Virus record (IMG/VR): IMGVR_UViG_3300027985_000843
Coordinates: 1-64,000 of that record
Reading direction: 5' to 3' (one strand)
DNA length: 64,000 nt
Below, piece after piece: positions 462 to 63,795 of the stretch (position 1 is the stretch's first letter; the number at the start of each line of letters is the position of its first letter). Both the position numbers and the translations under genes were made by a program. A model generated the notes under the pieces. That model made no database searches and had not been told where the DNA came from. It worked only from the letters and a program-made list of their open reading frames with translations.

Positions 462-536
462 CCTTGGTGTATGCTCCATGCCATGCGAGTAGACGAGCGT
501 TTTCTCAGGGCCGAAGCGGCCGCCCTGATCGGTTGA

Positions 537-546
537 TCTACCTATG
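537..546 (+). promoter_or_regulatory. Class III (putative late) promoter motif
   Basis: TCTACCTATG, 13 nt before ATG 560. Confidence 0.65.
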
Positions 547-559
547 CCGCCGTGATGGC

Positions 560-1309
560 ATGGAGTCGATCATCGCAAAAGCTGTCAATCGGTACCTCGT
601 GGCGAAAGTCATCAACCGCTACCTCGACCGAATTGGGAGGGCGCCCTTCCAGATGTCCATGGGCGGATGGGACGGAGTCGACCACTACTGGCCGACCTTC
701 AAGGACTTCGAGAACTGGTCCGAGAAGCGTGACCGTTGGGGCCACACCTACGAGGCCATGTACCAATACGACAGCACGAGCGAGAGCGGCTTCGGTCCCA
801 CGCTCAACCTGTTCGTCGACTTCGACGCCGCCAAGTACGTCGACACGAGCGGCAGCCAACCGATCAAGTGGGAAGCCACCTTCCACGGATCATCCAAGAA
901 GGGCACGGTTCGGAAGGTCGAGGACATCCGAGGGCTGATGGACAACCTGATCCGGGAAGCCAAGAAGGTCCGCGACAAGATCCAGGACCAGCTCAGCAGC
1001 GCAGGCGGCACCAACTGGGACACGCACTTCGATGGGTACGAGCTTTCGGCTCAGTTCCACAGCCCTCATCCTGAGAGCGAAGCCAGCATGACCGTGGTCT
1101 TCGACGAGCCCGACGAGGTCCTGTTCGGGACCAGCGGCGAGAAGGGGAATGCCCGCATCTGGTTCTCACTCGGATCCGATTACGAAGGACACTTTGGCAA
1201 GAAAGAAGTCACCAAGTCCTACAAGACCACAGGTGACGTCGAAAAGGTCCTCAAGGAAGCCGAAAAGCTCTTCGATAAGTGGTACCAGGAAGCCCAGCCG
1301 AAAGACTGA
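560..1309 (+). CDS. Hypothetical protein, putative virion-associated, with two N-terminal xV(I)NRYL motifs
   Basis: MESIIAKAVNRYLVAKVINRYL; start reassigned to 560 from class III motif spacing. Confidence 0.7.
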   Translation: MESIIAKAVNRYLVAKVINRYLDRIGRAPFQMSMGGWDGVDHYWPTFKDFENWSEKRDRWGHTYEAMYQYDSTSESGFGPTLNLFVDFDAAKYVDTSGSQPIKWEATFHGSSKKGTVRKVEDIRGLMDNLIREAKKVRDKIQDQLSSAGGTNWDTHFDGYELSAQFHSPHPESEASMTVVFDEPDEVLFGTSGEKGNARIWFSLGSDYEGHFGKKEVTKSYKTTGDVEKVLKEAEKLFDKWYQEAQPKD

Positions 1310-1336
1310 CTCGGCCTCCACCCCTTCCCAGCCAAC

Positions 1337-1343
1337 CGGTGTA
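1337..1343 (+). promoter_or_regulatory. Class II promoter motif upstream of tRNA
   Basis: CGGTGTA, 11 nt before tRNA 5' end. Confidence 0.65.
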
Positions 1344-1354
1344 TGTTCTGACCT

Positions 1355-1430
1355 GGGTCCGTCGTCCAGTGGTTAGGGCAGCGAATTTTAATCTCGCCTA
1401 TCGGGGGTTCGAATCCCCTCGGACCCGCCA
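1355..1430 (+). tRNA. tRNA with apparent TTA anticodon (ochre suppressor); Glu/Gln-like body; encoded CCA
   Basis: Acceptor GGGTCCG/CGGACCC, D arm GTCC-AGTGGTTA-GGGC, anticodon arm GCGAA-TTTTAAT-CTCGC, T arm GGGGG-TTCGAAT-CCCCT, 3' GCCA. The tRNA call is firm; the anticodon register is less so. Confidence 0.88.
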
Positions 1431-1449
1431 GAGCGAAAGGGTGGTTACC

Positions 1450-2349
1450 ATGGCAACGTTCGAAGACAGGGCACGGCTCCTGGACAGTATCGACATACAG
1501 TACATCCAGGCGTCTAAGTGGAAAGACAAGCGACGTCAGGACCTGGAGCTGTTCGAATCGGTCGAGCTGCCCCTGGACCCCGACCACTGGTGTAGCCTGT
1601 GCATGAGCGAGGGAGCCTCCTACGTCGGAGGCTGCTGCGGGACCATGTCCCACGTCCAGGACCTGCTCGAACATGTCTTCCGCATGGGTAACGGATACAT
1701 CCGGATGAATCAGTTCGCCAATCTCGTCGAAGCCATCCTCGATCACGGCGACTTCGAAGGGAAGATCCGGTTCGACAAGTTGGATCGGTCCATCGAAGAC
1801 ATCGCGGCAGAAGCCAAGGACTGTAGCGTGTGGGAGAGCTACAGCCCCTGGGATCTCATCGCCCTCACCTGGCACCTGACCAAGGACTTCTACTCCCCCA
1901 AGACGCCTACTCCGTACAACCAAGACTTCTCCGAGGTCGAGAAGGCCATCCACACCCTGCATCACGGGGCGTCGACCCTGAGCTGGGCCCTTCTGTGTCA
2001 AAAAACCAGTACCCCCGACGGCGAGTTCGATCTGGCGAGCCAGAGCCGGGGCAACCGTTCCGTGCTGCTGTACCGGCTCATCCCCGCCCTCAGGACGCTG
2101 TTCAATCGAATCGACGAGCTTGACGCTGGCCCCTTCGATGGCGTGGCACTCGTGGACACAGAGATCGACCGCAACGCCATCGCCCACAACAACCTCGGGC
2201 TGTGCATCTTCGGTTCGGAAGAAGACGCTCGCAAGCTCGTTGCCTTGTTGGACGAGGACGAAGCCAAGAAGATCGAACTGCGCCCCGTACAGGTCTCGAA
2301 AGAAAACGGCGTCGTTTTCAAAGATTCTTCCGAACCTGCCAAGCTCTAG
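1450..2349 (+). CDS. Hypothetical protein
   Basis: Long ORF; ATG 1450 follows the tRNA with an AAAGGG SD-like element. Confidence 0.7.
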   Translation: MATFEDRARLLDSIDIQYIQASKWKDKRRQDLELFESVELPLDPDHWCSLCMSEGASYVGGCCGTMSHVQDLLEHVFRMGNGYIRMNQFANLVEAILDHGDFEGKIRFDKLDRSIEDIAAEAKDCSVWESYSPWDLIALTWHLTKDFYSPKTPTPYNQDFSEVEKAIHTLHHGASTLSWALLCQKTSTPDGEFDLASQSRGNRSVLLYRLIPALRTLFNRIDELDAGPFDGVALVDTEIDRNAIAHNNLGLCIFGSEEDARKLVALLDEDEAKKIELRPVQVSKENGVVFKDSSEPAKL

Positions 2350-2364
2350 CCCCGTAGTAGGGGC
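2330..2364 (+). promoter_or_regulatory. Class I (putative early) promoter
   Basis: CCGAAC-N17-CGTAGTA-N5-ATG(2365); only copy with a 17-nt spacer. Confidence 0.8.
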
Positions 2365-2877
2365 ATGACTACCTCAAACACCGAAATCAAGGTTGGCGAC
2401 TACGTCCGAAGCTTCGACTTTGCGAATCCTCGCGATGCTGAAGAAAACCGCGACCTGACCGGCCCGAACGCCTCCTACGTCGAGGGTACCGTCGTCGAAA
2501 TCGGCAAGGGCGACCCCGACGAGAACCCTGCGGGCTACACCTGCTACAAGATTCTCGTCCAAAAGTGGGTCTTGCATGGTAAGCCCATGAAGACCGGCGG
2601 CCACGTGTACCCGCCCGTCAACGGAACCCCCTCTTGGCTCGGTGGCTTCACTAATGGTGTCGAGAAGATCACCGTCACTCCGGTCACCGTCGAGCTGGGC
2701 GCCTACAATGGCAGCCCTTCCATCATCGCCAAAATGGAAGAAACCCTCAAATACATCGAGGATGGAGCCAAGTCGTGGGCCGGGACCCAAGAGGAATACG
2801 AAAAGTGGGCCCTGGACATCGCCAGCGGCATGCTCGTCTCAATCTCCACCAAGCTCGTGACGAAGGCAGCAAAATGA
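2365..2877 (+). CDS. Hypothetical early protein
   Basis: ORF directly after class I motif; N-terminal SH3-like IKVGDYV pattern. Confidence 0.75.
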   Translation: MTTSNTEIKVGDYVRSFDFANPRDAEENRDLTGPNASYVEGTVVEIGKGDPDENPAGYTCYKILVQKWVLHGKPMKTGGHVYPPVNGTPSWLGGFTNGVEKITVTPVTVELGAYNGSPSIIAKMEETLKYIEDGAKSWAGTQEEYEKWALDIASGMLVSISTKLVTKAAK

Positions 2878-3044: not shown

Positions 3045-3262
3045 CCCAAGAAGAGCTGGAACAAGCCGCCAAGGAATTCTTGGCGGACAAGGACGGCTAT
3101 TCCCTGTGGTGTATAGCCACTGGGGGCCTTAGTTTCACGACGTACGAAGACGAGCTGGAGGCCAAGTACGGTGAGAGTGAACTTCAAGCCGTAAAGAACG
3201 CGATCTATCGAGAGGTGGATCGCATGAAGAATTCTCCGAACTCTTCTGAGCCGGGAGCGTAG
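3041..3262 (+). CDS. Small hypothetical protein
   Basis: ATGA overlap with upstream ORF. Confidence 0.6.
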   Translation: MTQEELEQAAKEFLADKDGYSLWCIATGGLSFTTYEDELEAKYGESELQAVKNAIYREVDRMKNSPNSSEPGA

Positions 3263-3269
3263 TAGGGAC
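3236..3269 (+). promoter_or_regulatory. Class I promoter
   Basis: CCGAAC-N16-CGTAGTA-GGGAC-ATG(3270). Confidence 0.85.
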
Positions 3270-3629: not shown

Positions 3630-3682
3630 ATGAAGGGGGTGCGATCGTTCTCAGGGCCGACTCAACCAAGACACCGAAAATT

Positions 3683-3716
3683 CCGAACCTCTTCCGAGAT
3701 GGAGCGTAGTAGGGAC
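3683..3716 (+). promoter_or_regulatory. Class I promoter
   Basis: CCGAAC-N16-CGTAGTA-GGGAC-ATG(3717). Confidence 0.85.
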
Positions 3717-4259: not shown

Positions 4260-4262
4260 GCC

Positions 4263-4484
4263 ATGAACAAGACACATCGAGCCGGAGTTCGGTACTCAGA
4301 CGGAAAGCAATGGTTCGCTCGCGGCAACTATCGGTCCTTCCTGACTGCGGAAGCTGCCGCAACCCGGTTGGCAAGGCCCACAGGGTCCCTGCCTCTCGTG
4401 AAGACCCCAGAGGGCAGCATCTTCTCTATCTGGGGCCCCGATCTGCCTTCGTACTGTTTCGGGTTGAAAGTTCCGAACCCTTGA
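4263..4484 (+). CDS. Small hypothetical protein
   Basis: ORF 3 nt after the upstream TAA, in frame with it. Confidence 0.55.
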   Translation: MNKTHRAGVRYSDGKQWFARGNYRSFLTAEAAATRLARPTGSLPLVKTPEGSIFSIWGPDLPSYCFGLKVPNP

Positions 4485-4506
4485 CGGCCGGGAGCGTAGT
4501 AGAAGC
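4473..4506 (+). promoter_or_regulatory. Class I promoter
   Basis: CCGAAC-N16-CGTAGTA-GAAGC-ATG(4507). Confidence 0.85.
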
Positions 4507-4788: not shown

Positions 4789-4790
4789 TT

Positions 4791-4824
4791 CCGAACCCTT
4801 GACCTCCGGGAGCGTAGTAGAGAC
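4791..4824 (+). promoter_or_regulatory. Class I promoter
   Basis: CCGAAC-N16-CGTAGTA-GAGAC-ATG(4825). Confidence 0.85.
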
Positions 4825-5990: not shown

Positions 5991-6042
5991 TGACCCCAAA
6001 GGTGGCCCACAACCTATTGAATGGTGGGACTACGAGGCAGCC

Positions 6043-10855: not shown

Positions 10856-10903
10856 GACAAGAGAAAAAGCCGAACTCTGCCGGCCGGCGACCGTAGTAGA
10901 GGC
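10856..10903. promoter_or_regulatory. Divergent class III (-) and class I (+) promoters
   Basis: Minus: TTCTCTTGTC-N13-ATG(10842). Plus: CCGAAC(10870)-N16-CGTAGTA-GAGGC-ATG(10904). Confidence 0.8.
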
Positions 10904-11337: not shown

Positions 11338-11444
11338 GCGGTGTATGTTCTTCGGATGAAGATTCGCATCCGAAGGGAAGACATCACCCGGGCGGGCTAC
11401 CAGCTCCCCGGCGGGGGAAGCGTCCTCAACACCGGAGACATCGA

Positions 11445-13015: not shown

Positions 13016-13049
13016 CCGAACCCGTTCGCTCGGGGAGCGTAGTACAGGC
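13016..13049 (+). promoter_or_regulatory. Class I promoter
   Basis: CCGAAC-N16-CGTAGTA-CAGGC-ATG(13050). Confidence 0.85.
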
Positions 13050-14306: not shown

Positions 14307-14584
14307 CCTGCCACCATACACCGGGCGCCGTCGCGAACCTCACCTGTACAGTGTTGCCCCTTGGAAGAATCGAGCCGTTCGAAGTACACCTCTCCTGCGA
14401 GCCCATAGAAGTCGATCATGCCTTGGGCAACCTTCTCAGCCCCTTCCTTGAGACGAGGATCTTCGCTGGTGGCCCGCGATCCTTGAATGCTGTCGACCCA
14501 CAGGTCCACAAGCATCGAGGCCCGGTCCATCACCTCGTGAAACTCCCCGTCGTTCACAATGTCCTCGTCCCAGTGCGTCGTCAT
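14303..14584 (-). CDS. Hypothetical protein
   Basis: ORF in minus-strand operon with ATGA overlaps. Confidence 0.55.
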   Translation of the reverse strand: MTTHWDEDIVNDGEFHEVMDRASMLVDLWVDSIQGSRATSEDPRLKEGAEKVAQGMIDFYGLAGEVYFERLDSSKGQHCTGEVRDGARCMVAG

Positions 14585-15694: not shown

Positions 15695-16082
15695 CTTCAA
15701 TGTCTACACCACCGAGCCGGCTCCAGAAGGAAGAAACTTTGGCCTTGTGCGCCTCTTCCAGCTGCTGCATCCACTCAGGCAGGTTAATCACCCCGAAAGA
15801 ACACAGGCTGCTATCCCGACTCCGAACGATTCCGAGTTGGATGCTGCCCACATCGTTTGGCGCCCACATGACCAGGACGTGCTGGCGTGGGTTGGAACGG
15901 GCGGCCGCCCGCACCCTCTCGCGGGCAATCGCGGGAGGGTCCCCCGACCCGAGCCACCCACCCCGCCGCCCTGTGTAGGATGGCAGGATCGTGCACCACT
16001 CGTCGCCCCGAGCACTCAGTCGCTCAGTGCCCGCAGGCAAGTCGTCGACGGTCCCCTCGTAGAACGACAGGCTCAGAGGCAT
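15687..16082 (-). CDS. Hypothetical protein with C-terminal SFWSRL..VD motif
   Basis: Ends SSFWSRLGGVDIEDA. Confidence 0.6.
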   Translation of the reverse strand: MPLSLSFYEGTVDDLPAGTERLSARGDEWCTILPSYTGRRGGWLGSGDPPAIARERVRAAARSNPRQHVLVMWAPNDVGSIQLGIVRSRDSSLCSFGVINLPEWMQQLEEAHKAKVSSFWSRLGGVDIEDA

Positions 16083-17348: not shown

Positions 17349-17645
17349 CTATTCTACACCGTATCGCTCGCGTTGTCGGGCTCGACGTTCCTGGAGGCTC
17401 GTTCCATGGTGGCGTCGGGTGCGACTGCACATCATGCAGGAGCACGGACAGCAGTGGGTCGATGCGAAGAGGCCAACCAGCTTCTTTGAGGGGTCGTACC
17501 ACTTCCCGAGGCCCACACCGTTGCGGGACTGGTTGGGGCCAGACCCGTTCGTGCTGGCAGCCGTGAGCCACACCTTGCCAAGGAATTGGTGGGCCTTGAC
17601 CTTCATGCGCCTGGCATGGTGTCGTCTGAACGCTCGGCTCCTCAT
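17349..17645 (-). CDS. Basic hypothetical protein
   Basis: RAFRRHH...CPCSCMMC. Confidence 0.55.
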   Translation of the reverse strand: MRSRAFRRHHARRMKVKAHQFLGKVWLTAASTNGSGPNQSRNGVGLGKWYDPSKKLVGLFASTHCCPCSCMMCSRTRRHHGTSLQERRARQRERYGVE

Positions 17646-18393: not shown

Positions 18394-18414
18394 GGGGCCT
18401 TCTATACACCGGTC

Positions 18415-19023: not shown

Positions 19024-19040
19024 TACACCAAATCGGTGTA
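19024..19040. promoter_or_regulatory. Back-to-back class II promoters
   Basis: TACACCA-aat-CGGTGTA; 12 nt to ATG 19011(-), 10 nt to ATG 19051(+). Confidence 0.8.
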
Positions 19041-19790: not shown

Positions 19791-19837
19791 GTCCCTACTA
19801 CGATCGTTCTGGACGATAGTTCGGAAAAATCGGTGTA
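19791..19837. promoter_or_regulatory. Divergent class I (-) and class II (+) promoters
   Basis: Minus: CCGAAC(19824)-N16-CGTAGTA-GGGAC-ATG(19790). Plus: CGGTGTA(19831)-N10-ATG(19848). Confidence 0.85.
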
Positions 19838-21783: not shown

Positions 21784-21819
21784 TACACCGGGTCGGGTGC
21801 CGTGGGCAATCTTCTTGTG
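21784..21819. promoter_or_regulatory. Divergent class II (-) and class III (+) promoters
   Basis: TACACCG (21784-21790) toward pyrE; TCTTCTTGTG(21810)-N13-ATG(21833). Confidence 0.7.
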
Positions 21820-22647: not shown

Positions 22648-22681
22648 GGCTCTACTACGTCAGGAACTAGGAGGAGTTCGG
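22648..22681 (-). promoter_or_regulatory. Class I promoter
   Basis: CCGAAC-N16-CGTAGTA-GAGCC-ATG(22647). Confidence 0.85.
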
Positions 22682-22978
22682 AAAGAGTTGCTTCTGGTAG
22701 GAGTGGAACACTTCGAGGACTTCCCGGGCCGATAGCGACTCGTCCACCTCGAAGCTCACCGACTTGGTTGCTACGACCACCGCGTAGCCCCTGCCGATCC
22801 ATACACCGGAAGTGACCTCCGGCCCAAGACGAACACGATGCAGCTCCTGAGCTGACAGGCCCATCCTGTACAGCTCAAGCTCGAACTTCACCCGGAACGC
22901 ATGGTGCTCCTGGATCCACTCGACGAGGGGTAGGCGATTCGAGATAGGTATTGTAGCCATTATCAATTCTTTGGTCAT
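22667..22978 (-). CDS. Hypothetical protein
   Basis: ATGA overlap with upstream ORF. Confidence 0.55.
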   Translation of the reverse strand: MTKELIMATIPISNRLPLVEWIQEHHAFRVKFELELYRMGLSAQELHRVRLGPEVTSGVWIGRGYAVVVATKSVSFEVDESLSAREVLEVFHSYQKQLFPNSS

Positions 22979-26185: not shown

Positions 26186-26207
26186 TACACCGGAGACCCC
26201 CGGTGTA
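26186..26207. promoter_or_regulatory. Back-to-back class II promoters
   Basis: TACACCG-N8-CGGTGTA. Confidence 0.8.
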
Positions 26208-27516: not shown

Positions 27517-27540
27517 TACACCTGCCGGCCCGCCGGTGTA
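27517..27540. promoter_or_regulatory. Back-to-back class II promoters
   Basis: TACACCT-N10-CGGTGTA. Confidence 0.75.
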
Positions 27541-28643: not shown

Positions 28644-28660
28644 TACACCGACTCGGTGTA
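28644..28660. promoter_or_regulatory. Back-to-back class II promoters (perfect palindrome)
   Basis: TACACCG-act-CGGTGTA. Confidence 0.8.
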
Positions 28661-34184: not shown

Positions 34185-34210
34185 TACACCGGGGAGGCCG
34201 CTTCGGTGTA
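34185..34210. promoter_or_regulatory. Back-to-back class II promoters
   Basis: TACACCG-N12-CGGTGTA, each exactly 10 nt from an ATG (34174, 34221). Confidence 0.85.
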
Positions 34211-35371: not shown

Positions 35372-35826
35372 ACCCTGATATCCTCGTGGATGCCCTGGCT
35401 GTGTTCGTCCTTTTGGCGGCCTTTGCCGTAGTGAAGTGGTCTCGCAAGTGGCTCAATCAAATCACCAGCCTTAATAACCAAGTCGGCGGTCTTGAGAGCC
35501 AGATTAGGATCCTCAAGGAAACGGTCCGCAGCAGGGAACAAGATCTCAACATCCTCAAAGAGGTCTCTGAGCATCGATGCTCCGAGTTCGAAGCCCGGCG
35601 GGCCGATCAAGCAGTGGAAAACGATCGACTGCGAAGGTACATTGCGTCTTTGCAGCGAGAAATTCAATCATTAAAGCGAGTCGACCAACACCAGATGAAT
35701 GTGCGGCACGACGCAAACGTGCCTCGCGAACCCCAACCACCCTCCGAACCACCACCGTCAGTCTTTCAACGTCTCGAACGCGATGATATATGGGACGCTG
35801 GCCCATGGGACACCGATCCGTCATGA
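35368..35826 (+). CDS. TM plus coiled-coil protein with C-terminal SVFxRL motif
   Basis: Ends PPSVFQRLERDDIWDAGPWDTDPS. Confidence 0.7.
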   Translation: MNPDILVDALAVFVLLAAFAVVKWSRKWLNQITSLNNQVGGLESQIRILKETVRSREQDLNILKEVSEHRCSEFEARRADQAVENDRLRRYIASLQREIQSLKRVDQHQMNVRHDANVPREPQPPSEPPPSVFQRLERDDIWDAGPWDTDPS

Positions 35827-39397: not shown

Positions 39398-39417
39398 CCT
39401 GGTGTATGGTACGGGGC

Positions 39418-39786: not shown

Positions 39787-40923
39787 ATGGTGACACCTAG
39801 CGATATCGGCTGGGGCAAGTACAGCCAGTATGAAGGCCCCTACTTCAGAGGTACCCGCAAGTTCCAGCTCCCGGCCAAGCCCTCCGAGGAGCACAGACTG
39901 CTGGCGGTCATCACGAGCACCGAAGGCGGCTCCTTCGACGCCATCAACATGTACGATCGATGCATCTTGAGCACCGGCTTGCTTCAGTGGTGCGAGGCGA
40001 AATACTTCCTCACGTCGAACCTGCTCGGCGCCATTGCGGCCGCAGACCCCTCCCTTCTTCAGCCATTGCAGGCAGCCCTCCAGGCCGCCGATGCCCAGTT
40101 CGTCGAGAAGAGCCCAGGCAAGTGGCGGTTCTTCTGGCGGGAACCCCGCAATGAGGTCGACGATGCGGTAGAGCAGGCGAAGCTTTTCCTTCTCGACTCG
40201 TCCGGCCACCAAGGGAGCTGGAACGAGACGTCGAAGCACTACGCCAACCTGTGGGCCGCCAAAATTGCCAGCGTGCTCGCCCAGGATGCCGCGATCGAGA
40301 TCCAGACTCAGTACACGGCCAACCGAGTCAAGATGTTCGCCACCCCGGCCGCCTCCAGAATCCTCTTCGATGGTACCCCGTCCACGGGCTGGACGGGGGC
40401 CACACGGGCCATCTACCTGTCCTTTGCTGCCAACCTCCCTGCCGCCGCCTCGACGCAATTGCAGGCCGCTGTAGCCGAGACAGGAGCCGCCAAGTGGAGC
40501 AAGGAGTGGTGCATCCACATCTCCCGCCGCCTGACCTTCGGCCCGAACATCTCCATCTACCCTCACCGGTACAACGCCATCCGGCCCGTCGTCGAGAAGC
40601 TCTACGGCGTCGATCTGCCGGACATGGCCGGGGAGCTTCAGGTGTGGAAGGGCGAGCAGGGACTCGGGGACGTGTCCGACGAAGATATCCTGAGCGAGGA
40701 ACTGCACGAGCCGACCTTCACGACCGTCAAGGAGGTCCAGCGGCTCCTCGTCGACATGGGCTACGACCTCGGGCCCGCCGGGGCCGACGGGGTCATGGGT
40801 CGCAAGACGAAGGAAGCCCTCCTGGTCTTTCAGGGGAACGCAGGGCTGAAGGCTGACGGATTGATTGGGCCCAAGACGCGGGCCGCGATGGTCACGGCGT
40901 GGCGGGACAAGGTGTGCGCCTAG
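39787..40923 (+). CDS. Lysozyme-like domain plus C-terminal PG-binding domain (endolysin-like)
   Basis: TEGGSFDAINMYD...GLLQW; VKEVQRLL..GY...ADGVMG..T..A...FQ...LKADGLIGPKT. Confidence 0.8.
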   Translation: MVTPSDIGWGKYSQYEGPYFRGTRKFQLPAKPSEEHRLLAVITSTEGGSFDAINMYDRCILSTGLLQWCEAKYFLTSNLLGAIAAADPSLLQPLQAALQAADAQFVEKSPGKWRFFWREPRNEVDDAVEQAKLFLLDSSGHQGSWNETSKHYANLWAAKIASVLAQDAAIEIQTQYTANRVKMFATPAASRILFDGTPSTGWTGATRAIYLSFAANLPAAASTQLQAAVAETGAAKWSKEWCIHISRRLTFGPNISIYPHRYNAIRPVVEKLYGVDLPDMAGELQVWKGEQGLGDVSDEDILSEELHEPTFTTVKEVQRLLVDMGYDLGPAGADGVMGRKTKEALLVFQGNAGLKADGLIGPKTRAAMVTAWRDKVCA

Positions 40924-43602: not shown

Positions 43603-43639
43603 TACACCGGTACTACGTCCGTCCGGTCAACAAGTTCGG
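43603..43639 (-). promoter_or_regulatory. Tandem class I plus class II promoters
   Basis: CCGAAC-N16-CGTAGTA-c-CGGTGTA on minus strand, upstream of the GHKL gene. Confidence 0.8.
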
Positions 43640-43644
43640 AAAAA

Positions 43645-44199: not shown

Positions 44200-44226
44200 G
44201 CCCCCAACATACACCGGACAGCTAGA

Positions 44227-45515: not shown

Positions 45516-45593
45516 GACTTTCTCCTTGGAAGGGGACGTTACTAGAGGCCCGCTCAGCGTGCAAGTTTTTGAGCCTTGGTGTATGTAGCAGGT

Positions 45594-50601: not shown

Positions 50602-50618
50602 TACACCAGACCGGTGTA
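50602..50618. promoter_or_regulatory. Back-to-back class II promoters
   Basis: TACACCA-gac-CGGTGTA, each 10 nt from an ATG (50591, 50629). Confidence 0.85.
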
Positions 50619-51083: not shown

Positions 51084-51427
51084 AACGTCGAGCTTTTCTT
51101 CAGGTGCTTGCTGTCACAGCAGTGCCGCTGGTGGGGTCTTTCCAAGGCGACACTGAGGACGCCTACATTCAGCTCTACGACGGCGACAAGGCGGTGACCA
51201 AGCCGCTACCCACCAAGTTCAGGTGGAACAGCAAGATGACGGTCACGGTCCAACCCTCACAACCTATCCGAGTGACCCGTGCTGTCCTGTACTCCCCCAA
51301 GGTGGGCCGAAGGAATCACGACATCGACCCCCTCATCATCAAGCCTTCGACTGAATTAACGGTGACTTGGGAGATCGGCGCGGTTTCCTCAAAAGATTTT
51401 CCGAACTCCTCCCGACGGCGAGCGTAG
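51080..51427 (+). CDS. Putative Tat-exported protein
   Basis: GTG start after AGGAG: MKRRAFLQVLAVTAVPLVG, a twin-arginine RRxFL signal. Confidence 0.6.
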   Translation: MKRRAFLQVLAVTAVPLVGSFQGDTEDAYIQLYDGDKAVTKPLPTKFRWNSKMTVTVQPSQPIRVTRAVLYSPKVGRRNHDIDPLIIKPSTELTVTWEIGAVSSKDFPNSSRRRA

Positions 51428-51434
51428 TAGGGAC
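51401..51434 (+). promoter_or_regulatory. Class I promoter
   Basis: CCGAAC-N16-CGTAGTA-GGGAC-ATG(51435). Confidence 0.85.
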
Positions 51435-55188: not shown

Positions 55189-55195
55189 GGACATT

Positions 55196-56208: not shown

Positions 56209-56384
56209 GAGGGTTCCTCTCCGACCACGAACCATAAACAGAAAGTTGGCCGTCTCGTCTCAGGAGCCTATCGTGGCGGCATGATGATCCAAATCACACT
56301 GCCCGCCGACGCCACCGCGCTCGAAGTCATGTACCTCAAAAATTCCCTGCCGCTTGGTTGGCGACTCCGGTGTATCCCTGAGGT

Positions 56385-57869: not shown

Positions 57870-57903
57870 CCAAGCCCTTCTCGCCACGATCTAGGAGACA
57901 CAC

Positions 57904-59031
57904 ATGGTTGCTTTCGAGCTATCCCAGAGTTTCGAGATGCCGGACGTCCTGCAAGCCGGGCGCCCCGACACCCGGCCCATCAGACGGGCGATCGACTTGT
58001 TCCGCCACCACTCCTCCAAGGATGAGTGGGACAAGCTATGCCAGTACACCGTCGAGGCCCTTTCCCGGAGCACGTCCCAAAAGGACGACCGCAAAATCAT
58101 GAGCATCCAAGCGATGCTCCTCGGAGACTGGGACAACATCAAGTCCACCGAAGGGAACAAGCGGATACAGGAGGGACGGTACAAGGTCTGGGTCGTCTGG
58201 GTGCAGACCGTCGCCCCGCACTGGTACAAGAACCTGCTCCGGTGCCACCTGGAGATGTGGAGCCTCCAGGTGCCCGAAGGGCCGGACCAAAACAACATCC
58301 GCAAGCTGTATCAGACGTTCGCCGTCGACTGCGGGTCCCTGCTGTGGGGATGGGACAACCACAACAACGCGGAGAGTCGGATCGCCGAACTCCAAAACCT
58401 CATCCTCCAAATCGAAACCCCTCAGCAGAGCTGGATAATGGAAGAACGCCACGTCTTCCAGTACAACTACGAAGTTTCCTTCATTTCTCGCTTGACAGAG
58501 GTTCCCCCCACCCCTGTCAACTCCACCAATACCCCCTACGCCGCTGAGCCGCCCTCTCGGCGAGAAGCTCGCAACGCCATCGAAGAAGCTGCCTACGACT
58601 ACGTCCTGAACCTGTTCCCCAACATCGACAACGCCGACGTGACAGCGTGGCCGATCGAACCCTGTTGGGTCTTGCTCCGGGCAGACGGGCAGATCCAGCG
58701 GCTTCTCATGGTGTTTCGCTACAACCAGGCATTCTCGCGAATCCCTAGGGTCGTGACGGCCTTCGGGGGCATGAACGTCATGGGACTCGTCAACGAGGAG
58801 GAATGCGATTCTAGCCACCCTCTGTTCGCCGGAGAGCTGCAATTCGCTGGCACCCGCCGAGTCGTGCTATTCAACCTCAAGGGAGCGAATACCACACTCG
58901 TTCGTACGTGGGTGAGTCGGTCGGTCCCCGCGAAAGAAGACATCGTCAAAGAGTTCTACCTTGCCAATGGCGATGGTATGCGTAAGGTCCGGCCCGACGT
59001 GTACGCGAAGGCGAAGAGTCTCAAGAAATGA
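57904..59031 (+). CDS. Hypothetical protein
   Basis: 375-aa ORF with AGGAG SD. Confidence 0.75.
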   Translation: MVAFELSQSFEMPDVLQAGRPDTRPIRRAIDLFRHHSSKDEWDKLCQYTVEALSRSTSQKDDRKIMSIQAMLLGDWDNIKSTEGNKRIQEGRYKVWVVWVQTVAPHWYKNLLRCHLEMWSLQVPEGPDQNNIRKLYQTFAVDCGSLLWGWDNHNNAESRIAELQNLILQIETPQQSWIMEERHVFQYNYEVSFISRLTEVPPTPVNSTNTPYAAEPPSRREARNAIEEAAYDYVLNLFPNIDNADVTAWPIEPCWVLLRADGQIQRLLMVFRYNQAFSRIPRVVTAFGGMNVMGLVNEEECDSSHPLFAGELQFAGTRRVVLFNLKGANTTLVRTWVSRSVPAKEDIVKEFYLANGDGMRKVRPDVYAKAKSLKK

Positions 59032-60011
59032 CCACAGCCCGTCCCTTTCTCAAGTGGGCCGGCGGCAAGCACCAGCTCTTGCCGCAACTCCTGAATATCT
59101 TCCCCAGACAATGCGGGACCTACTACGAGCCCTTTGTCGGGGGAGGGTCAGTGTTCTTCGAGGTAGCGTCCCGCAAGAGAATCAATTTCGGCCGGGCTGT
59201 CCTCAATGATGCCAACCAGGAGCTGATCGACTGCTATCAGGCGGTCAGAAGCTTCCCTCGCGATCTGATCCTCCAGCTCAAGAGGTGGGAAGTCAACAAG
59301 GAAACGTTCCATCGCGTCAGATCCATGCAACCTGAAGACCTGAGCCCAGCTCGCCGGGCCGCTCGCATGATCTATCTCAACAAGGTGTGCTTCAACGGGC
59401 TGTACCGCGTCAACAAGCAGGGGCAGTTCAACTCCCCCTTCGGTAGGTGGCCCCGGCCGCCCCGGCCCCTTGATGCCCCCAACCTACTGAGCTGCTCCGC
59501 TGTCCTCAATCGATACGCGGCCTTGTACAACCAGGACTTCGCACAGGCCGTGCTGGACGCCCAAGAGGACGACCTCGTCTACTTCGACCCGCCGTACGTC
59601 CCCCTCAACCCAACCTCGAACTTCACCAGCTACACCAAGGACGGGTTCTATCAGCAGGACCAGGAGCGCCTCGCGCTGCTCTTCCGGCAACTCGTGGCCC
59701 GAGGGGTGAAGGTGATACTCTCGAACTCCGATACGCCTCTAGTTCGAGAGCTGTACCACGGGTTCGAGATGCACGAGGTTCTGGTTCGGAGAAGCATCAA
59801 CTCCAAAGGGACGCAACGGGGAGGAGTTCCCGAGCTTATCGTTGTGGGCCGGCCCGAACTGTTGGTCGACCCCTACCCCGAATGGCTCGGCGGCCGCCCG
59901 CCCTCGCACGAACAAGTCGACTACGCCGCCTACATGGCCTCCCTCGAAGAGGCGGGCGAGCTGCGGGACGGCGACGAGTTCACCCTGAGCGACTTGGACG
60001 CACTTTTCTGA
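59028..60011 (+). CDS. dam: DNA adenine methyltransferase (Dam/D12 class)
   Basis: PFLKWAGGK, YYEPFVGGGSV, FNGLYRVN..G.FN.PFG, YFDPPY. Confidence 0.93.
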   Translation: MTTARPFLKWAGGKHQLLPQLLNIFPRQCGTYYEPFVGGGSVFFEVASRKRINFGRAVLNDANQELIDCYQAVRSFPRDLILQLKRWEVNKETFHRVRSMQPEDLSPARRAARMIYLNKVCFNGLYRVNKQGQFNSPFGRWPRPPRPLDAPNLLSCSAVLNRYAALYNQDFAQAVLDAQEDDLVYFDPPYVPLNPTSNFTSYTKDGFYQQDQERLALLFRQLVARGVKVILSNSDTPLVRELYHGFEMHEVLVRRSINSKGTQRGGVPELIVVGRPELLVDPYPEWLGGRPPSHEQVDYAAYMASLEEAGELRDGDEFTLSDLDALF

Positions 60012-60019
60012 GAGAATCC

Positions 60020-60053
60020 CCGAACTTCTTCCGTCGGCGGTCGTAGTACGACC
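60020..60053 (+). promoter_or_regulatory. Class I promoter
   Basis: CCGAAC-N16-CGTAGTA-CGACC-ATG(60054). Confidence 0.85.
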
Positions 60054-60617: not shown

Positions 60618-62911
60618 GCATCATCCGCCGAAGCGACATCCTGGACTCCTCCGATGAGGTCCTCGTCGGACAATGGTACTGGGTCAATAGCGAGGACGGC
60701 CGATGGCTCGGATGCGTCATCCGTCTGGGCTCGAACTTTGTTGCATTGGAAGGTCCGGGCACTTGGAGCGTCCGGATCCTCAACGATGACTTCTGGAAGT
60801 GTTGTGAACGGGAATACGACCCCGACAAGGTCATCCACAGCGAGATCAACAAATACCGCAACCAAGTAGCCGAACTCACCGGCCAGGTGCGCGAGCTGAC
60901 AGCCCAGCTTTCCGTCGCTCCCTCCGACATGCTCCCTGAGAACGGAGGGGAGACCTGCGCCCTCGCCAAGATCGGCATGGGGCAGGACATCCACCAGTAC
61001 AAGGCAGACCTCATCAAAGCCAAAAACGAGACTCTGCCCGACCTGTTTTCGAAGATCAAGAAGGCCACTGAAGGGATGGCCCATTGGATGGAGGCCAAGC
61101 TCATCCCCCTCAAGGCGGAGACGTCCGCCATGCAGTCGAGCATCGACCACATCAAAGAGCGAATCTTCCATGTCCAGCTCTATGCCGGCCTCACCGAAGA
61201 CATCGCCCTGATTCAGGACGGAAACCCTGCACCGACCGAGACCCCGATCCACCTCATGCAGCGGCGCTGCTACATGGATGAGGAATGCCTGCTGGACTAC
61301 AAGGCGGGCGGCATGGAGTTCAAAAATATCGGCGAGTTCGATGCGTGGCTCACCAAGCCCGGCAACCTCAACCGTATCTTGCCGTTCCCTCGCACCGTCG
61401 TGTCCTTTCGCGTCCGTCGAATACGCAAAGAGCACGAGATCAACGCAATCAGCGACATCATCCGGGTAGGCGACCTCATCCAAGCCGACTGCGCAACGTT
61501 CCTGTACATCCGGAACGGCGAGCAGGTCTTTCGGATGAACACAAGCATCGACTTTGGGCCGAGGCTCTTCCCGGACCTCAACGACCGGCAGCTCAAGGGA
61601 GACAAACTGTGGGCCAAGATGTGGAGTGAGGGTAACGTCGACCGTCTGATCACGGATCGCGAGTACCAGGCCATCTACGAGAGTGACCACAAGGAATTGG
61701 CCGAATGGGAGGTCCTCCGGAAAGAAGACGCACGCAATAGGGCCCAGTGGGAGGCCGACAAGGCCGCCGGCAAAAACGTGCCCAAACGGTTCGAGGGTAA
61801 TCATCGGGCATGGTTCGCCCCACACACGTCATACCAGGACTACAAGCCCTTCAACAAGTCGCACGTCTACTACGATGACATCTGCGAGAAGGTTGCTAGC
61901 GACATCAAAGAGCACAACCGGATCGTGCTCATCCTCCAGGGGCTGCTCGACCGTTCCCCCGTCTTCCAACCCCACCCCAAGTGGGAGCTGTGGACTGCCA
62001 GCGGATTCGAGGCAGCCTTCACCCTCGTTCTAGATGACACCCGCACACTGCCTGCTGGCGAGAAGCCCGACTTCGAAGCCTACCGCCGCAAGTGCAATGC
62101 CTCCCTTAAGGACGGATCGATCACCGTAGGGCAGGAATACATGTGGGAAAAGGAAGAGGCGAGGAAGGAAAACGACAAGATGGCTGGCCGAGGTTATCGT
62201 GACCGGAGCATCGGCTACCACCGGTACCGCCCCTACGGCAACCCCGGGCCGGGCCTCGTTGCCCGCGTTGCCAAGCACACTCGGTCAGGCAAGTGCACCT
62301 ACGCTTGGATGAAGGAGAAGAGTACCAGGGAGGGCACGATTCGTTGCACCTTCACGTGCAGCCAGAAGCATGTGCTCAACGTCGAAGCCTACAAGCCGGG
62401 GGACTACCACATCTTCTTCGACGATCCCCGCACACGGCAGGAATACCTCCAGTGGGCCCCTTTGCTTCTGACCGCAGAGGACTATCACGCGGAACTCCTG
62501 AAGGTGAAGGACGTCCCCGATCCCCAACCAAAGAAGCAAAGTTCCTGGGAGGGCAAGGAACGCTACCGCTACCGGAAGCTTCACAAGGAACTCAGCGGTA
62601 AGGTGGTGCAGCTTGTAAACGACATCGAGATGAAGAACGGCCGCGTTTACAAGGCCGGAACCGTTTGGCGGGTCAGGGAGGGTGGGAGCGGGCGAGACTT
62701 CAGCCTCTCAGGCATCGATACAGACGGCGAGCATCTCGCACGTTGGATCAACGGTGCCCAGGTGTACGACTTCAAGGTCGTCGACGATCTACAGAAAGCC
62801 CTCGGAGAGATTCCGGAGTGCCAAGTAGAGGATCCCCCCGAAGGGGAGGAGACTGAGGAAAAGGTATACGATGACGATGAGGAGGACGACATTGGTCTTC
62901 ACCTGCCGTAG
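60614..62911 (+). CDS. Large hypothetical protein (765 aa)
   Basis: ATGA overlap; long ORF with typical codon usage. Confidence 0.8.
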   Translation: MSIIRRSDILDSSDEVLVGQWYWVNSEDGRWLGCVIRLGSNFVALEGPGTWSVRILNDDFWKCCEREYDPDKVIHSEINKYRNQVAELTGQVRELTAQLSVAPSDMLPENGGETCALAKIGMGQDIHQYKADLIKAKNETLPDLFSKIKKATEGMAHWMEAKLIPLKAETSAMQSSIDHIKERIFHVQLYAGLTEDIALIQDGNPAPTETPIHLMQRRCYMDEECLLDYKAGGMEFKNIGEFDAWLTKPGNLNRILPFPRTVVSFRVRRIRKEHEINAISDIIRVGDLIQADCATFLYIRNGEQVFRMNTSIDFGPRLFPDLNDRQLKGDKLWAKMWSEGNVDRLITDREYQAIYESDHKELAEWEVLRKEDARNRAQWEADKAAGKNVPKRFEGNHRAWFAPHTSYQDYKPFNKSHVYYDDICEKVASDIKEHNRIVLILQGLLDRSPVFQPHPKWELWTASGFEAAFTLVLDDTRTLPAGEKPDFEAYRRKCNASLKDGSITVGQEYMWEKEEARKENDKMAGRGYRDRSIGYHRYRPYGNPGPGLVARVAKHTRSGKCTYAWMKEKSTREGTIRCTFTCSQKHVLNVEAYKPGDYHIFFDDPRTRQEYLQWAPLLLTAEDYHAELLKVKDVPDPQPKKQSSWEGKERYRYRKLHKELSGKVVQLVNDIEMKNGRVYKAGTVWRVREGGSGRDFSLSGIDTDGEHLARWINGAQVYDFKVVDDLQKALGEIPECQVEDPPEGEETEEKVYDDDEEDDIGLHLP

Positions 62912-62976
62912 GGGCAGGGGGTAGCCGTGGCACTGAACCCACATGACCGCTAGGTCCCGCCGGTACTGTTCAAGGC

Positions 62977-63360
62977 TTACTCCTTCGGGTCTTCGTGGTG
63001 GCCTAAATCCCATGACTCGACATCATACACCGAACCGCCCTCCCGCACGCCCAGCTCTTCCTCACTGAGGTATTCGGGGTGCCACCCGGCATGCACCTCT
63101 TGGTGGCAGTTGGAGCACAGCAGCACGCACTTGCTCAGCTCGGGCTCGATGGCCTGCCACGACAGCCGAGAGCTGATTTCGAAGTCCTTCTCCCGTGGGT
63201 CCATGTGATGGAACACCATGGCTGCCGGGCACTTGTCGTAGCCGCAGATACGGCACTTGCCACCGAGGTGAGCGATGGCCCTGTCTTTGACCTCTCGACG
63301 CCGCTGGGCTGCCTCGAAGTTTCGCTGCCAGCGGGCGTCAAGTTTCTCTGCGATCGTCAC
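62977..63360 (-). CDS. HNH endonuclease
   Basis: GGKCRICGY.KC.AA..FHH.DP..KDF...ELSKCVLLCSNCH.EVH. Confidence 0.88.
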   Translation of the reverse strand: MTIAEKLDARWQRNFEAAQRRREVKDRAIAHLGGKCRICGYDKCPAAMVFHHMDPREKDFEISSRLSWQAIEPELSKCVLLCSNCHQEVHAGWHPEYLSEEELGVREGGSVYDVESWDLGHHEDPKE

Positions 63361-63362
63361 TG

Positions 63363-63761
63363 CTAGCGAGCTGCCTTGTCGATTCGCTCTTCGGCTCCCT
63401 TGCTAGGAGCTTGCGGCATTGTCGTGCGGAGACGCTCGCCTGCCCACTTGGCTAGGAGCTGGAAGTCCGTGTAACCATCGAGACCATGCTTATCAGCAGC
63501 CCGACCGAGCCAGTAGTCTGCCGGCTTCTCCCGGTCGTCGCCCATCATCTTGATAGCTTCCGATCGAATCTTCTGGAACAGCTGCTTGTACTTCGCCTTG
63601 GGAAGTTGACCCCCGGCACCTGCAACCCGATCGGCGATGTCCCGCAGCTTACCTGCTAGGACGTCGCGGTCGGGCTTGCCGCCGGGGCCGTGGCCCTGGA
63701 TGAAGGCCATCAGGGAGCGGAGTTCCGCTTGCAGCTCCTGGGGAGACGCGATCTTCTGCAT
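63363..63761 (-). CDS. Putative late protein with MQKIAS leader
   Basis: TCTTCCTATG-N13-ATG; N-terminus similar to 55600-56208. Confidence 0.7.
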   Translation of the reverse strand: MQKIASPQELQAELRSLMAFIQGHGPGGKPDRDVLAGKLRDIADRVAGAGGQLPKAKYKQLFQKIRSEAIKMMGDDREKPADYWLGRAADKHGLDGYTDFQLLAKWAGERLRTTMPQAPSKGAEERIDKAAR

Positions 63762-63774
63762 AGCCATGGTACGG

Positions 63775-63795
63775 CATAGGAAGATCCTCGGTGTA
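63775..63795. promoter_or_regulatory. Divergent class III (-) and class II (+) promoters
   Basis: CATAGGAAGA-tcct-CGGTGTA-N10-ATG(63806). Confidence 0.8.

What the first reader, a model, noticed from the sequence alone, without database searches (positions are those of the whole stretch)
465..63795. Class II single-box promoter YGGTGTA-N10-ATG (about 30 copies), including six back-to-back bidirectional pairs
Seen 9-12 nt (mostly 10) before starts at 11356, 14306, 15694, 17343, 18393, 19011/19051, 19848, 26175/26219, 27505/27550, 28633, 34174/34221, 39418, 44199, 45594, 50591/50629, 56385, 63013, 63806 and before the tRNA. Pairs at 19024, 28644 and 50602 are only 3 nt apart (TACACCR-nnn-CGGTGTA). 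A -35 element would then fall in the opposite gene, and none is conserved. Established analogy: T4 gp55 late promoters are single -10-like boxes. Inference: a phage-encoded sigma or RNAP reads a compact 7-mer for middle genes, giving very short leaders mostly without an SD. It also precedes a tRNA, so it is unlikely to be only a translation signal.
Basis: partly seen in the sequence, partly recalled or inferred. Interest (0 to 1): 0.75.

Follow-up and report, generated by a model that had tools for sequence, protein, structure and literature searches.

The report
Single-box leaderless phage promoter GGTGTA
The six-base word GGTGTA sits ten bases before about a hundred gene starts of an uncultured giant phage from a hydrothermal vent, and is most likely a one-piece promoter that starts each messenger RNA on its start codon: a new variant of promoter types already known from other phages.

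Summary
YGGTGTA occurs 46 times in the window against 7.3 expected. Genome-wide, 89 of 259 GGTGTA copies have ATG 9-11 nt downstream, against about 11 expected. No -35 box is conserved. The motif extends to GGTGTA-t-g-n-T, so a TAnnnT hexamer lies at -12 to -7 if the A of ATG is +1. That is the geometry of leaderless mRNAs.

Several facts mark it as a transcription signal, not a translation signal:
- Motif genes lack a Shine-Dalgarno sequence and start almost only with ATG.
- One copy is placed the same way before a tRNA.
- Some copies precede short leaders that carry their own Shine-Dalgarno sequence.
- Fifteen copies form back-to-back divergent pairs.

The motif, with diverged spacers, is kept before orthologous genes in seven related metagenomic contigs. 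All seven carry a tandem pair of sigma-like genes. A distant relative has neither the genes nor the motif.

A second class, CCGAAC-N16-CGTAGTA-N5-ATG, is also present. It looks like an ECF-sigma promoter, and its -35 box differs between lineages.

No recognisable RNA polymerase gene was found. The factor that reads GGTGTA is unproven. A phage sigma is favoured, but host sigma-A is not excluded. No transcript data exist.

Verdict: a new variant of a known kind (phiEco32 gp36, T4 gp55, Thermus-phage leaderless promoters).

The parts
1337..1343 (+). CGGTGTA, then 11 nt, then the 5' end of tRNA(anticodon UUA) at 1355-1430
   Evidence: The predicted start site at 1354/1355 coincides with the mature tRNA 5' end.
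11339..11345 (+). CGGTGTA-N10-ATG 11356; open frame of only 33 codons, so uncertain
14317..14323 (-). CGGTGTA-N10-ATG 14306 (64 aa)
15705..15711 (-). TGGTGTA-N10-ATG 15694 (166 aa)
17355..17361 (-). CGGTGTA-N11-ATG 17343 (118 aa)
18405..18411 (-). CGGTGTA-N11-ATG 18393 (190 aa)
19024..19030 (-). TGGTGTA-N12-ATG 19011 (198 aa); back-to-back with 19034
19034..19040 (+). CGGTGTA-N10-ATG 19051 (142 aa); back-to-back with 19024
19831..19837 (+). CGGTGTA-N10-ATG 19848 (86 aa); diverges from a class E promoter on the minus strand (19802)
21784..21790 (-). CGGTGTA followed by a 22-nt stretch with AAGGAG, then ATG 21761: the short-leader form with its own Shine-Dalgarno sequence
26186..26192 (-). CGGTGTA-N10-ATG 26175 (735 aa); back-to-back with 26201
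26201..26207 (+). CGGTGTA-N11-GTG 26219 (160 aa)
27517..27523 (-). AGGTGTA-N11-ATG 27505 (96 aa); back-to-back with 27534
27534..27540 (+). CGGTGTA-N9-ATG 27550 (120 aa)
28644..28650 (-). CGGTGTA-N10-ATG 28633 (64 aa); back-to-back with 28654
28654..28660 (+). CGGTGTA followed by a leader of about 40 nt with AGGAGAAGAGAG, then TTG 28711 (52 codons): leadered form, tentative
34185..34191 (-). CGGTGTA-N10-ATG 34174 (227 aa); back-to-back with 34204
34204..34210 (+). CGGTGTA-N10-ATG 34221 (266 aa)
39400..39406 (+). TGGTGTA-N11-ATG 39418 (81 aa; not in my gene set)
44210..44216 (-). CGGTGTA-N10-ATG 44199 (184 aa)
45577..45583 (+). TGGTGTA-N10-ATG 45594 (153 aa)
50602..50608 (-). TGGTGTA-N10-ATG 50591 (205 aa); back-to-back with 50612
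50612..50618 (+). CGGTGTA-N10-ATG 50629 (57 aa)
56368..56374 (+). CGGTGTA-N10-ATG 56385 (123 aa)
63026..63032 (-). CGGTGTA-N12-ATG 63013 (74 aa; not in my gene set)
63789..63795 (+). CGGTGTA-N10-ATG 63806 (74 aa; runs past the window end)

Best explanation
GGTGTA is the core of a one-piece, -10-type promoter of a giant (over 370 kb) uncultured phage.

Geometry. With the A of the start codon as +1, the word occupies -16 to -11 and runs on as TAtgnT (-12 to -7). This is the place and shape of a sigma-70-family -10 hexamer, preceded by an invariant GGTG. No -35 box is used. RNA polymerase therefore opens the DNA about 11 bp before the ATG and starts the transcript on the A of ATG. The mRNA has no leader and no Shine-Dalgarno sequence. 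A minority of copies are placed further upstream and give short leaders with their own Shine-Dalgarno sequence. One copy makes a tRNA whose 5' end is the start site.

Use. About 100 copies head transcription units for nucleotide and DNA metabolism and many small unknown genes. Fifteen are back-to-back divergent pairs that must compete for polymerase.

Reader (inferred). The enzyme is host core RNA polymerase carrying a phage-made sigma-like factor. The phage has two such genes in tandem (genome 282,040-283,859, minus strand), both behind a host-type TTGACT-N17-TAGGAC promoter. Sigma-1 has a clear sigma domain 2 with an inserted domain of about 75 residues and no detectable domain 4. That suits a promoter without a -35 box. 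Sigma-2 has a clear domain 4 and more likely reads the second, bipartite class CCGAAC-N16-CGTAGTA.

Shown: the motif, its spacing, its conservation and the sigma-like genes.
For: Enrichment and fixed spacing.

Hexamer and absence of a -35 box: the spacer consensus is t-g-n-T, which gives TAnnnT at -12 to -7, and nothing is conserved further upstream.

No Shine-Dalgarno sequence: 4 of 70 motif genes have an SD-like word, against 8.4% at random positions. ATG is the start in 90% of motif genes against about 70% of other genes.

Transcription rather than translation:
- tRNA 5' end 11 nt after the motif.
- About 24 copies followed by an SD-bearing short leader and an open frame, some probably by chance.
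- In relative L011 the divergent pair has 16-nt and 26-nt spacers, the latter with GGAGG.
- Divergent start codons only 32-47 nt apart, with the two motifs as the only conserved words between them.
- No excess of canonical sigma-70 promoters in 17-36 kb: 4 found against 4.2 expected.

Geometry confirmed by rare copies that also carry TTGAC 16-17 nt upstream of the TA: G000 255503 and 276408; L030 8432 and 9748.

Conservation. GGTGTA-N9-11-RTG is enriched in sigma-bearing relatives: L007 10 against 1.0 expected, L029 6 against 0.7, L030 4 against 0.8, L028 3 against 0.6, L031 2 against 0.06, L010 1 against 0.09. It is kept, with diverged spacers, before orthologous genes for ADP-ribosylglycohydrolase, dCTP deaminase, an N6/N4 methyltransferase and a 124-aa protein. 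The distant relative G001 has no enrichment of the motif and no match to either sigma-like protein.

Sigma-1: Pfam Sigma70_r2 7e-7. The model's residues 20-180 match domain 2 of SigB (Z 7.3), AlgU, SigK, sigma-70, T4 gp55 and phiEco32 gp36. The C-terminal part gave no domain-4 match.

Sigma-2: the C-terminal 85 residues match domain 4 of many sigmas and the C-terminus of gp36 (Z 6.7).

Covariation: the class E -35 box differs between lineages, and so does the sigma-2 helix-turn-helix.

No RNA polymerase families in the genome.

Precedents: phiEco32 gp36 uses a single element, tAATGTAtA, with the start 6-8 bp downstream and no region 4 (PMC8948821, PMC12276001).
Against: - No transcript 5' ends are available: no RNA run holding this phage was listed.
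Both sigma-like genes and both promoter classes co-occur in all near relatives, so co-occurrence cannot separate them.
- Structural matches are modest (Z 5-7) and the models are of middling confidence (pLDDT 68-73).
- T at -7 is only 66% conserved.
- In phiEco32 the related word is centred at -11.5. If that register applied here it would give a 2-nt leader rather than none.
- The TAnnnT hexamer and the copies with a TTGAC -35 box are just what host sigma-A would use.
- The record is only about 78% complete, so another factor may lie in the missing part.
- The host is unknown.
Confidence: 0.55

Rival explanations
1. Host primary sigma (sigma-A) holoenzyme reads the motif as a -10-only, extended -10-like promoter and makes leaderless mRNAs. 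It may be helped by a phage protein that disables -35 recognition or touches GGTG. This is how Thermus phages phiYS40, P23-45 and Lalka27a and Deinococcus-Thermus hosts work. The phage sigmas would then serve other promoters.
For: - TAnnnT lies at -12 to -7 relative to the ATG.
- Some copies have TTGAC at 16-17 nt.
- Host-type TTGAC-N17-TAnnnT promoters in this phage are also followed by ATG 5-6 nt after the hexamer: 162234, 268297, 255503.
- Literature: a -10 motif next to the ORF is sufficient as a promoter in Deinococcus-Thermus (PMC12340547). Most Lalka27a and phiYS40 transcripts are leaderless, and the late promoters have one conserved -10 word, TAGGGT (bioRxiv 10.64898/2026.04.20.719267). 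P23-45 gp39 switches host polymerase to extended -10 promoters (PMC4124052).
Against: - GGTG at -16 to -13 is invariant and tolerates no mismatch, unlike host -10 regions.
- TG sits at -14/-13, not at the -15/-14 of the canonical TGn extension.
- T at -7 is only 66% conserved.
- The same word is kept in relatives whose G+C ranges from 49 to 65%. It is absent from the distant relative G001, which gave no match to either sigma-like protein.
Confidence: 0.3
2. A phage-encoded RNA polymerase reads the compact word. The enzyme would be single-subunit or a divergent multisubunit type, as in phiKZ, AR9, N4 or P23-45 gp64. It would be too divergent to detect, or encoded in the missing ~22% of the genome.
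For: Compact, nearly invariant promoter words are typical of phage polymerases. The record is incomplete. Most proteins of this phage have no family match.
Against: - No match to PF00623, PF00562 or PF00940. The PF00940 control genomes contain no member, so that search is uninformative.
- The word has the shape and position of a sigma-type -10 element.
- Two sigma-like genes are conserved with it.
Confidence: 0.07
3. It is not a promoter. It could be a translation signal in the RNA (a non-canonical ribosome-binding word that pairs with the CACC of the 16S 3' end), an RNA-processing site, or the operator of a DNA-binding regulator.
For: GGUG is complementary to part of the anti-Shine-Dalgarno region. 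Several copies form inverted repeats, as operators do.
Against: - A 12-nt gap between GGUG and AUG is too long. The invariant TA does not pair with the 16S tail.
- The motif precedes a tRNA and leaders that carry their own Shine-Dalgarno sequence.
- Most copies are single half-sites, and the gaps between halves range from 0 to 37 nt.
- No other promoter-like word exists between divergent starts 32-47 nt apart.
Confidence: 0.04

Closest known systems
phiEco32 gp36-dependent middle/late promoters (single element tAATGTAtA)
   Same: - One highly conserved word near -10 that contains TGTA, and no -35 element.
- Read by a phage sigma without a recognisable region 4.
- Start site 6-8 bp after the element.
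- The phage sigma is made after early, host-sigma-driven expression (PMC8948821, PMC12276001).
- The sigma-1 model matches gp36 domain 2 (Z 5.1). The sigma-2 C-terminus matches the gp36 C-terminus (Z 6.7).
   Different: - A different word (GGTGTA against AATGTA), and probably a register 2 nt further upstream.
- About 100 copies against 6.
- A start codon placed on the predicted start site.
- Two sigma-like genes rather than one.
- No detectable sequence similarity to gp36.
- No gp79-like activator was looked for.
T4 gp55 late promoters (TATAAATA)
   Same: A single -10-like box without a -35 element, read by a small phage sigma that has only a domain-2-like part. The sigma-1 model matches gp55 (PDB 7d7d_F) at Z 5.3.
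   Different: - An unrelated consensus.
- T4 late transcripts have leaders with ribosome-binding sites.
- T4 needs the sliding clamp gp45 and gp33; nothing of the kind was tested here.
- Here the class heads metabolism-type genes, not the presumed structural block.
Leaderless -10-only promoters of Deinococcus-Thermus and of Thermus phages (phiYS40, P23-45, Lalka27a)
   Same: - A TAnnnT hexamer 6 nt before the start codon.
- No Shine-Dalgarno sequence, and a transcript that starts on the A or G of the start codon.
- Phage classes with one conserved -10 word and no -35.
- Divergent late promoters in short intergenic regions (PMC12340547; bioRxiv 10.64898/2026.04.20.719267; PMC4124052).
   Different: - Those promoters are read by host sigma-A, and the phages encode no sigma.
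- Their extension, where present, is TGn, or a C at -25 with TAGGGT.
- Here an invariant GGTG directly abuts the TA, and the phage carries its own sigma-like genes.
ECF-sigma bipartite promoters (AAC in the -35 box, CGT in the -10 box)
   Same: This applies to the companion class E (CCGAAC-N16-CGTAGTA), not to GGTGTA. It shows that the phage uses sigma-family factors of this kind.
   Different: GGTGTA has no -35 partner and no CGT core.

Membership tests
Single-element promoters of phage sigmas (phiEco32 gp36 / T4 gp55 type) | One conserved element near -10 and no conserved -35 element | tested here: met
   The position matrix of 85 sites has at most 0.14 bit at every position from -45 to -2 upstream of the motif. 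GGTGTA itself is invariant.
Single-element promoters of phage sigmas (phiEco32 gp36 / T4 gp55 type) | The phage encodes a sigma-like protein with domain 2 but no functional domain 4 | tested here: inconclusive
   Sigma-1 has domain 2 by Pfam (7e-7) and by fold (Z up to 7.3), and no domain-4 match. Its C-terminus is helical and could be a diverged domain 4. A second sigma-like protein with domain 4 lies next to it.
Single-element promoters of phage sigmas (phiEco32 gp36 / T4 gp55 type) | Transcription from the element depends on that sigma; start site 6-8 bp downstream | not testable with these tools
   No RNA run was listed and there is no biochemistry. The evidence is indirect: start codons or the tRNA 5' end lie 10-12 nt after the A of GGTGTA.
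T4 late promoters | Consensus TATAAATA at -10 | tested here: not met
   The consensus here is YGGTGTAtgnT.
Leaderless-mRNA promoters (-10 hexamer adjacent to the ORF) | TAnnnT ending 6 nt before the start codon | tested here: met
   TA is invariant at -12/-11. T at -7 is present in 56 of 85 sites. Spacing is N10 in 54, N11 in 23 and N9 in 8 of 85.
Leaderless-mRNA promoters (-10 hexamer adjacent to the ORF) | No Shine-Dalgarno sequence; AUG (rarely GUG) as the first codon | tested here: met
   An SD-like word occurs in 4 of 70 motif genes against 8.4% at random positions. Starts are 63 ATG and 7 GTG. At N10, TTG and CTG are not enriched.
Leaderless-mRNA promoters (-10 hexamer adjacent to the ORF) | Mapped 5' end on the start codon | not testable with these tools
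   No transcript data.
Extended -10 promoters (TGn-TAnnnT) | TG at -15/-14, one base before the hexamer | tested here: not met
   TG lies at -14/-13, directly next to the TA. G at -16 and G at -15 are also invariant.
Shine-Dalgarno-type ribosome-binding site | Complementarity to the 16S 3' tail, 5-10 nt before the start; found only before protein genes | tested here: not met
   The gap from GGTG to ATG is 12 nt. The motif precedes a tRNA and leaders that carry their own Shine-Dalgarno sequence.
Phage RNA-polymerase promoters | A phage-encoded RNA polymerase | tested here: not met
   No match to PF00623, PF00562 or PF00940 in the 371 kb held. The record is about 78% complete, and very divergent enzymes would be missed.

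The most novel reading that the evidence does not exclude
A clade of giant phages runs its pre-late programme with two sigma-like factors of its own. Each reads a private promoter class (GGTGTA single-box; xxxAAC-N16-CGTAGTA bipartite) built so that transcription starts on the start codon. This gives some 150 leaderless mRNAs per genome. Sigma-1 would read the invariant GGTG through the ~75-residue domain inserted in its domain 2, a new way of making a -35-independent promoter. The wholesale use of leaderless mRNA would let the phage favour its own messages at the ribosome.
Probability: 0.3. Interest if true: 0.7.

Novelty: new variant of a known kind. Interest (0 to 1): 0.55.

Why it matters
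Giant phages from metagenomes are almost entirely unannotated. A promoter word read off the sequence gives their transcription units, their true start codons (many longest-frame calls here start at the GTG inside the motif) and a first view of their regulatory cascade.

The scale of leaderless expression is also of interest. About 100 GGTGTA units and about 50 units of the second class extend what was known from Thermus phages to a different, uncultured lineage. This makes the question of selective translation of leaderless phage mRNAs testable.

Tried and rejected
- Transcript evidence: only DNA runs of a hydrothermal-vent metagenome hold the sequence. No RNA run was listed.
- Known phages: no near match in the phage collection.
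- Host identification: the CRISPR-repeat scan and the ClpX-like protein scan of genome contigs both came back empty.
- Presumed late block: PHROGs gave nothing for ten large proteins of the 100-195 kb block at 1e-5. No convincing late-promoter word was found there.
- Second tRNA example: rejected. In L028 the tRNA-Pro starts 5 nt after GGTGTA, too close for the rule.
- Sigma paralogue: a family profile found only sigma-1 itself in the genome. The 309-aa protein with a weak region-4 hit (genome 361,394-362,323) is not a convincing sigma. The 225-aa protein at 218,306-218,983 has region-4-like helix-turn-helix motifs but no domain 2.
- Solved structures: a sequence search with the sigma-1 profile gave only chance hits. 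Foldseek on the whole model was not significant. The domain-wise aligner was needed.
- TAA read-through: in-frame extensions after TAA are not significantly more frequent than after TAG or TGA.
- Distant sigma-1 homologue contig L032 (4.3 kb): uninformative.
- Complex prediction was not used. A pass would not have told which sigma reads which promoter.

Full report
**What the window is.** The window is the first 64 kb of a 371,739-bp virus record with 59.4% G+C. The record is linear and estimated to be 78% complete. DNA runs of a hydrothermal-vent metagenome hold it. Nothing close is in the phage collection. Most of its proteins match no family. It carries 47 tRNA genes, a tmRNA and a CRISPR array. 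It is therefore an uncultured giant phage.

**The observation.**
- YGGTGTA occurs 46 times in the window against 7.3 expected from shuffles, and 190 times in the genome.
- In 85 of the 190 copies an ATG follows after 9-11 nt (54 at exactly 10). The background is 2.6 per offset.
- For the bare hexamer the figure is 89 of 259. No one-mismatch variant is clearly enriched.
- At N10 only ATG is enriched. GTG is slightly enriched, and TTG and CTG are not.
- In the window I count 23 credible copies before protein starts, one before the tRNA and two before short leaders. That is about 26, not 30.
- The remaining copies lie inside genes, at about the number base composition predicts: 134 'other' GGTGTA genome-wide against about 163 expected for all copies (for the count; the expectation is my own calculation from base frequencies).
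- Back-to-back pairs are real: 15 genome-wide against 2.1 expected, six of them in the window, and three perfect palindromes TACACCGGTGTA elsewhere.

**Anatomy.** Aligned on the motif, nothing upstream is conserved (at most 0.14 bit per position from -45 to -2). There is no -35 element. Downstream, T, G and T are preferred at spacer positions 1, 2 and 4. If the A of ATG is +1 at the commonest spacing, the word reads Y(-17) G G T G T(-12) A(-11) t g n T(-7). TA at -12/-11 and T at -7 are the hallmarks of a sigma-70-family -10 hexamer at its normal distance from the start site. A few copies also carry TTGAC 16-17 nt upstream of the TA, both in this phage and in a relative. That independently fixes the TA at -12/-11. 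The TG lies at -14/-13, not at the -15/-14 of the classical extended -10. GGTG is invariant.

**Transcription or translation?**
- Motif genes lack a Shine-Dalgarno sequence: 4 of 70 have an SD-like word, below the 8.4% found at random positions. About half of the other genes have one near a candidate start.
- The motif stands 11 nt before the 5' end of the lone tRNA.
- About two dozen copies are followed instead by a leader with its own Shine-Dalgarno sequence and an open frame, some probably by chance. Examples are window 21784-21790 and genome 86038, 98688 and 326177.
- In relative L011 a divergent pair has longer spacers, one with GGAGG.
- Divergent start codons 32-47 nt apart leave room for nothing but the two motifs.
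- Canonical -35/-10 promoters are not enriched in 17-36 kb.

Together these make a promoter by far the best reading. The strict spacing, the ATG-only rule and the lack of any purine preference inside the spacer argue that the start site is the A of the ATG. The mRNAs would then be leaderless. No transcript data could be found to prove it.

**Relatives.** A sigma-like protein, sigma-1 (genome 282,948-283,859, minus strand), has homologues on metagenomic contigs with 49-65% G+C.
- GGTGTA-N9-11-RTG is enriched in L007, L028, L029, L030, L031 and L010, and GGTGTA is present in L011.
- The motif is kept, while the spacer sequence has diverged, before the orthologous genes for ADP-ribosylglycohydrolase, dCTP deaminase, an N6/N4 methyltransferase and a 124-aa protein.
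- A more distant giant phage, G001 (435.8 kb, complete), has a homologue of the window's 735-aa protein at 39% identity. That homologue has a plain Shine-Dalgarno start. G001 has no motif enrichment and gave no match to either sigma-like protein.

**Who reads it?** No RNA polymerase family was found.

Sigma-1:
- It has Pfam Sigma70_r2.
- Residues 20-180 of its predicted structure match domain 2 of many sigmas, including T4 gp55 and phiEco32 gp36.
- A domain of about 75 residues is inserted where ECF sigmas have their specificity loop.
- Its C-terminal part gave no domain-4 match.

Sigma-2:
- This is the next gene (282,040-282,900), conserved in the same position in the relatives where that stretch is held.
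- Its C-terminus matches domain 4 of many sigmas and the C-terminus of gp36.
- It has a weak region-2-like stretch.

The pair lies behind a host-type TTGACN-N17-TAnnAC promoter and a long leader in most of the relatives examined (L007, L028, L030, L031 and this phage).

**A second promoter class.** While looking at genes without the motif I found a second class, ttCCGAAC-N16-CGTAGTA-N5-ATG. There are 48 strict copies, about 60 in all, twelve of them in the window.
- It has the AAC/CGT look of ECF-sigma promoters.
- It too puts the ATG on the expected start site.
- It heads small genes of unknown function: 5 Pfam families among 40 products.
- GGTGTA, by contrast, heads thymidine kinase, DNA ligase, dCTP deaminase, uracil-DNA glycosylase, MazG, an SNF2 helicase and a ClpX-like ATPase.
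- Across relatives its -10 word CGTAGTA is kept, but the -35 box changes: CCGAAC, CTAAAC, CTGGAT. The helix-turn-helix of sigma-2 changes with it.

So sigma-2 probably reads that class. Sigma-1, which has no detectable domain 4, is left for the box without a -35. This assignment is an inference by elimination.

**The main rival.** Host sigma-A could use GGTG-TAnnnT as a -10-only promoter. This is documented for Deinococcus-Thermus genes (PMC12340547) and for Thermus phages, whose transcripts are mostly leaderless and whose late promoters have one conserved -10 word (bioRxiv 10.64898/2026.04.20.719267; PMC4124052). Three things speak against it:
- the invariance of GGTG;
- its off-register TG;
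- its constancy across relatives of very different base composition.

These do not exclude it. The host could not be identified.

**Comparison with what is known.** The nearest precedent is phiEco32. Its sigma gp36, which lacks region 4, reads a single element tAATGTAtA with the start 6-8 bp downstream (PMC8948821, PMC12276001). T4 gp55 is a looser analogy. The leaderless layout matches Thermus-phage and Deinococcus-Thermus practice. New here are:
- the word itself;
- the strict coupling of about 100 copies to start codons;
- two phage promoter classes beside two sigma-like genes;
- the occurrence in an uncultured giant-phage clade whose sigma-1 family has 232 cluster representatives.

I rate it a new variant of a known kind, of moderate interest. 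The core claim (promoter, -10 type, leaderless) stands at about 0.85. Reading by a phage sigma stands at about 0.55, and by sigma-1 specifically at about 0.4.

Noticed in passing
window 2336-2359, 3241-3264, 3688-3711, 4478-4501, 4796-4819, 10875-10898, 13021-13044, 19796-19825(-), 22653-22682(-), 43611-43640(-), 51406-51429, 60025-60048; about 60 copies genome-wide: A second phage promoter class: ttCCGAAC-N16-CGTAGTA-N5-ATG. It is bipartite and looks like an ECF-sigma promoter, and it also places the ATG on the expected start site. It heads mostly small genes of unknown function. The -10 word is kept in relatives while the -35 box changes (CTAAAC in L029, CTGGAT in L030). A copy lies in the leader of the sigma operon, which suggests autoregulation.
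   Followed up: yes
genome 282,040-283,960 (minus strand; L001, L023): Two sigma-like genes in tandem. Sigma-1 is 303 aa, with domain 2 plus an inserted domain. Sigma-2 is 286 aa, with a domain-4-like C-terminus. They lie behind a host-type TTGACT-N17-TAGGAC promoter and a leader of about 95 nt that is conserved in relative L007 and has no Rfam match. A methyltransferase gene with a GGTGTA-N10-GTG start follows.
   Followed up: yes
window 6004-6040; genome about 349,125-349,160 and 351,640-352,935: A phage-borne CRISPR array of about 19 repeats of 36 nt (CTCAAAGGTGGCCCACGACCTATTGAATGGTGGGAC). It lies next to a 764-aa homologue of Cas12m (PDB 23vw_A, E 3.9e-20), a DNA-binding effector. Solitary repeat copies lie just before the ORFs at window 6043/6342 and before the cas12m-like gene. 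In relative L011 one lies in the leader of the sigma gene.
   Followed up: partly
window 1355-1430: A tRNA with anticodon UUA, an ochre (UAA) suppressor, stands apart from the main tRNA cluster and is driven by a GGTGTA promoter. TAA is the rarest stop (50 of 421 genes). I found no significant sign of TAA read-through.
   Followed up: partly
genome 247,554-276,034 (minus strand): A cluster of 46 tRNA genes and a tmRNA (tag ANDNSAMPVAA). Several GGTGTA promoters start directly after tRNA 3' ends (249847, 260992, 273574).
   Followed up: no
window 35790-37514, 39787-40923, 59028-60011: A protein with a transglycosylase domain (PF00912, 1e-45), a protein with peptidoglycan-binding domains, and a D12-class adenine methyltransferase (1e-62).
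   Followed up: no
genome 358,800-363,500: A stretch in which my codon-usage gene caller called nothing, although it holds long open frames with GGTGTA starts (359776+, 548 aa, with DUF4379 zinc-finger repeats; 362323-, 309 aa). The composition is atypical and the stretch is possibly of foreign origin.
   Followed up: partly
genome 166,560-166,640, 169,364, 176,080 (minus strand): Short CCCAGATCCA(G/A)A repeats before three genes of the presumed structural block. There are too few to call a promoter class.
   Followed up: partly
window and genome, many gene starts: With N10 spacing the GTG inside GGTGTA is in frame with the true ATG. Longest-frame gene calls therefore start five codons too early at about 20 of the motif genes.
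   Followed up: yes
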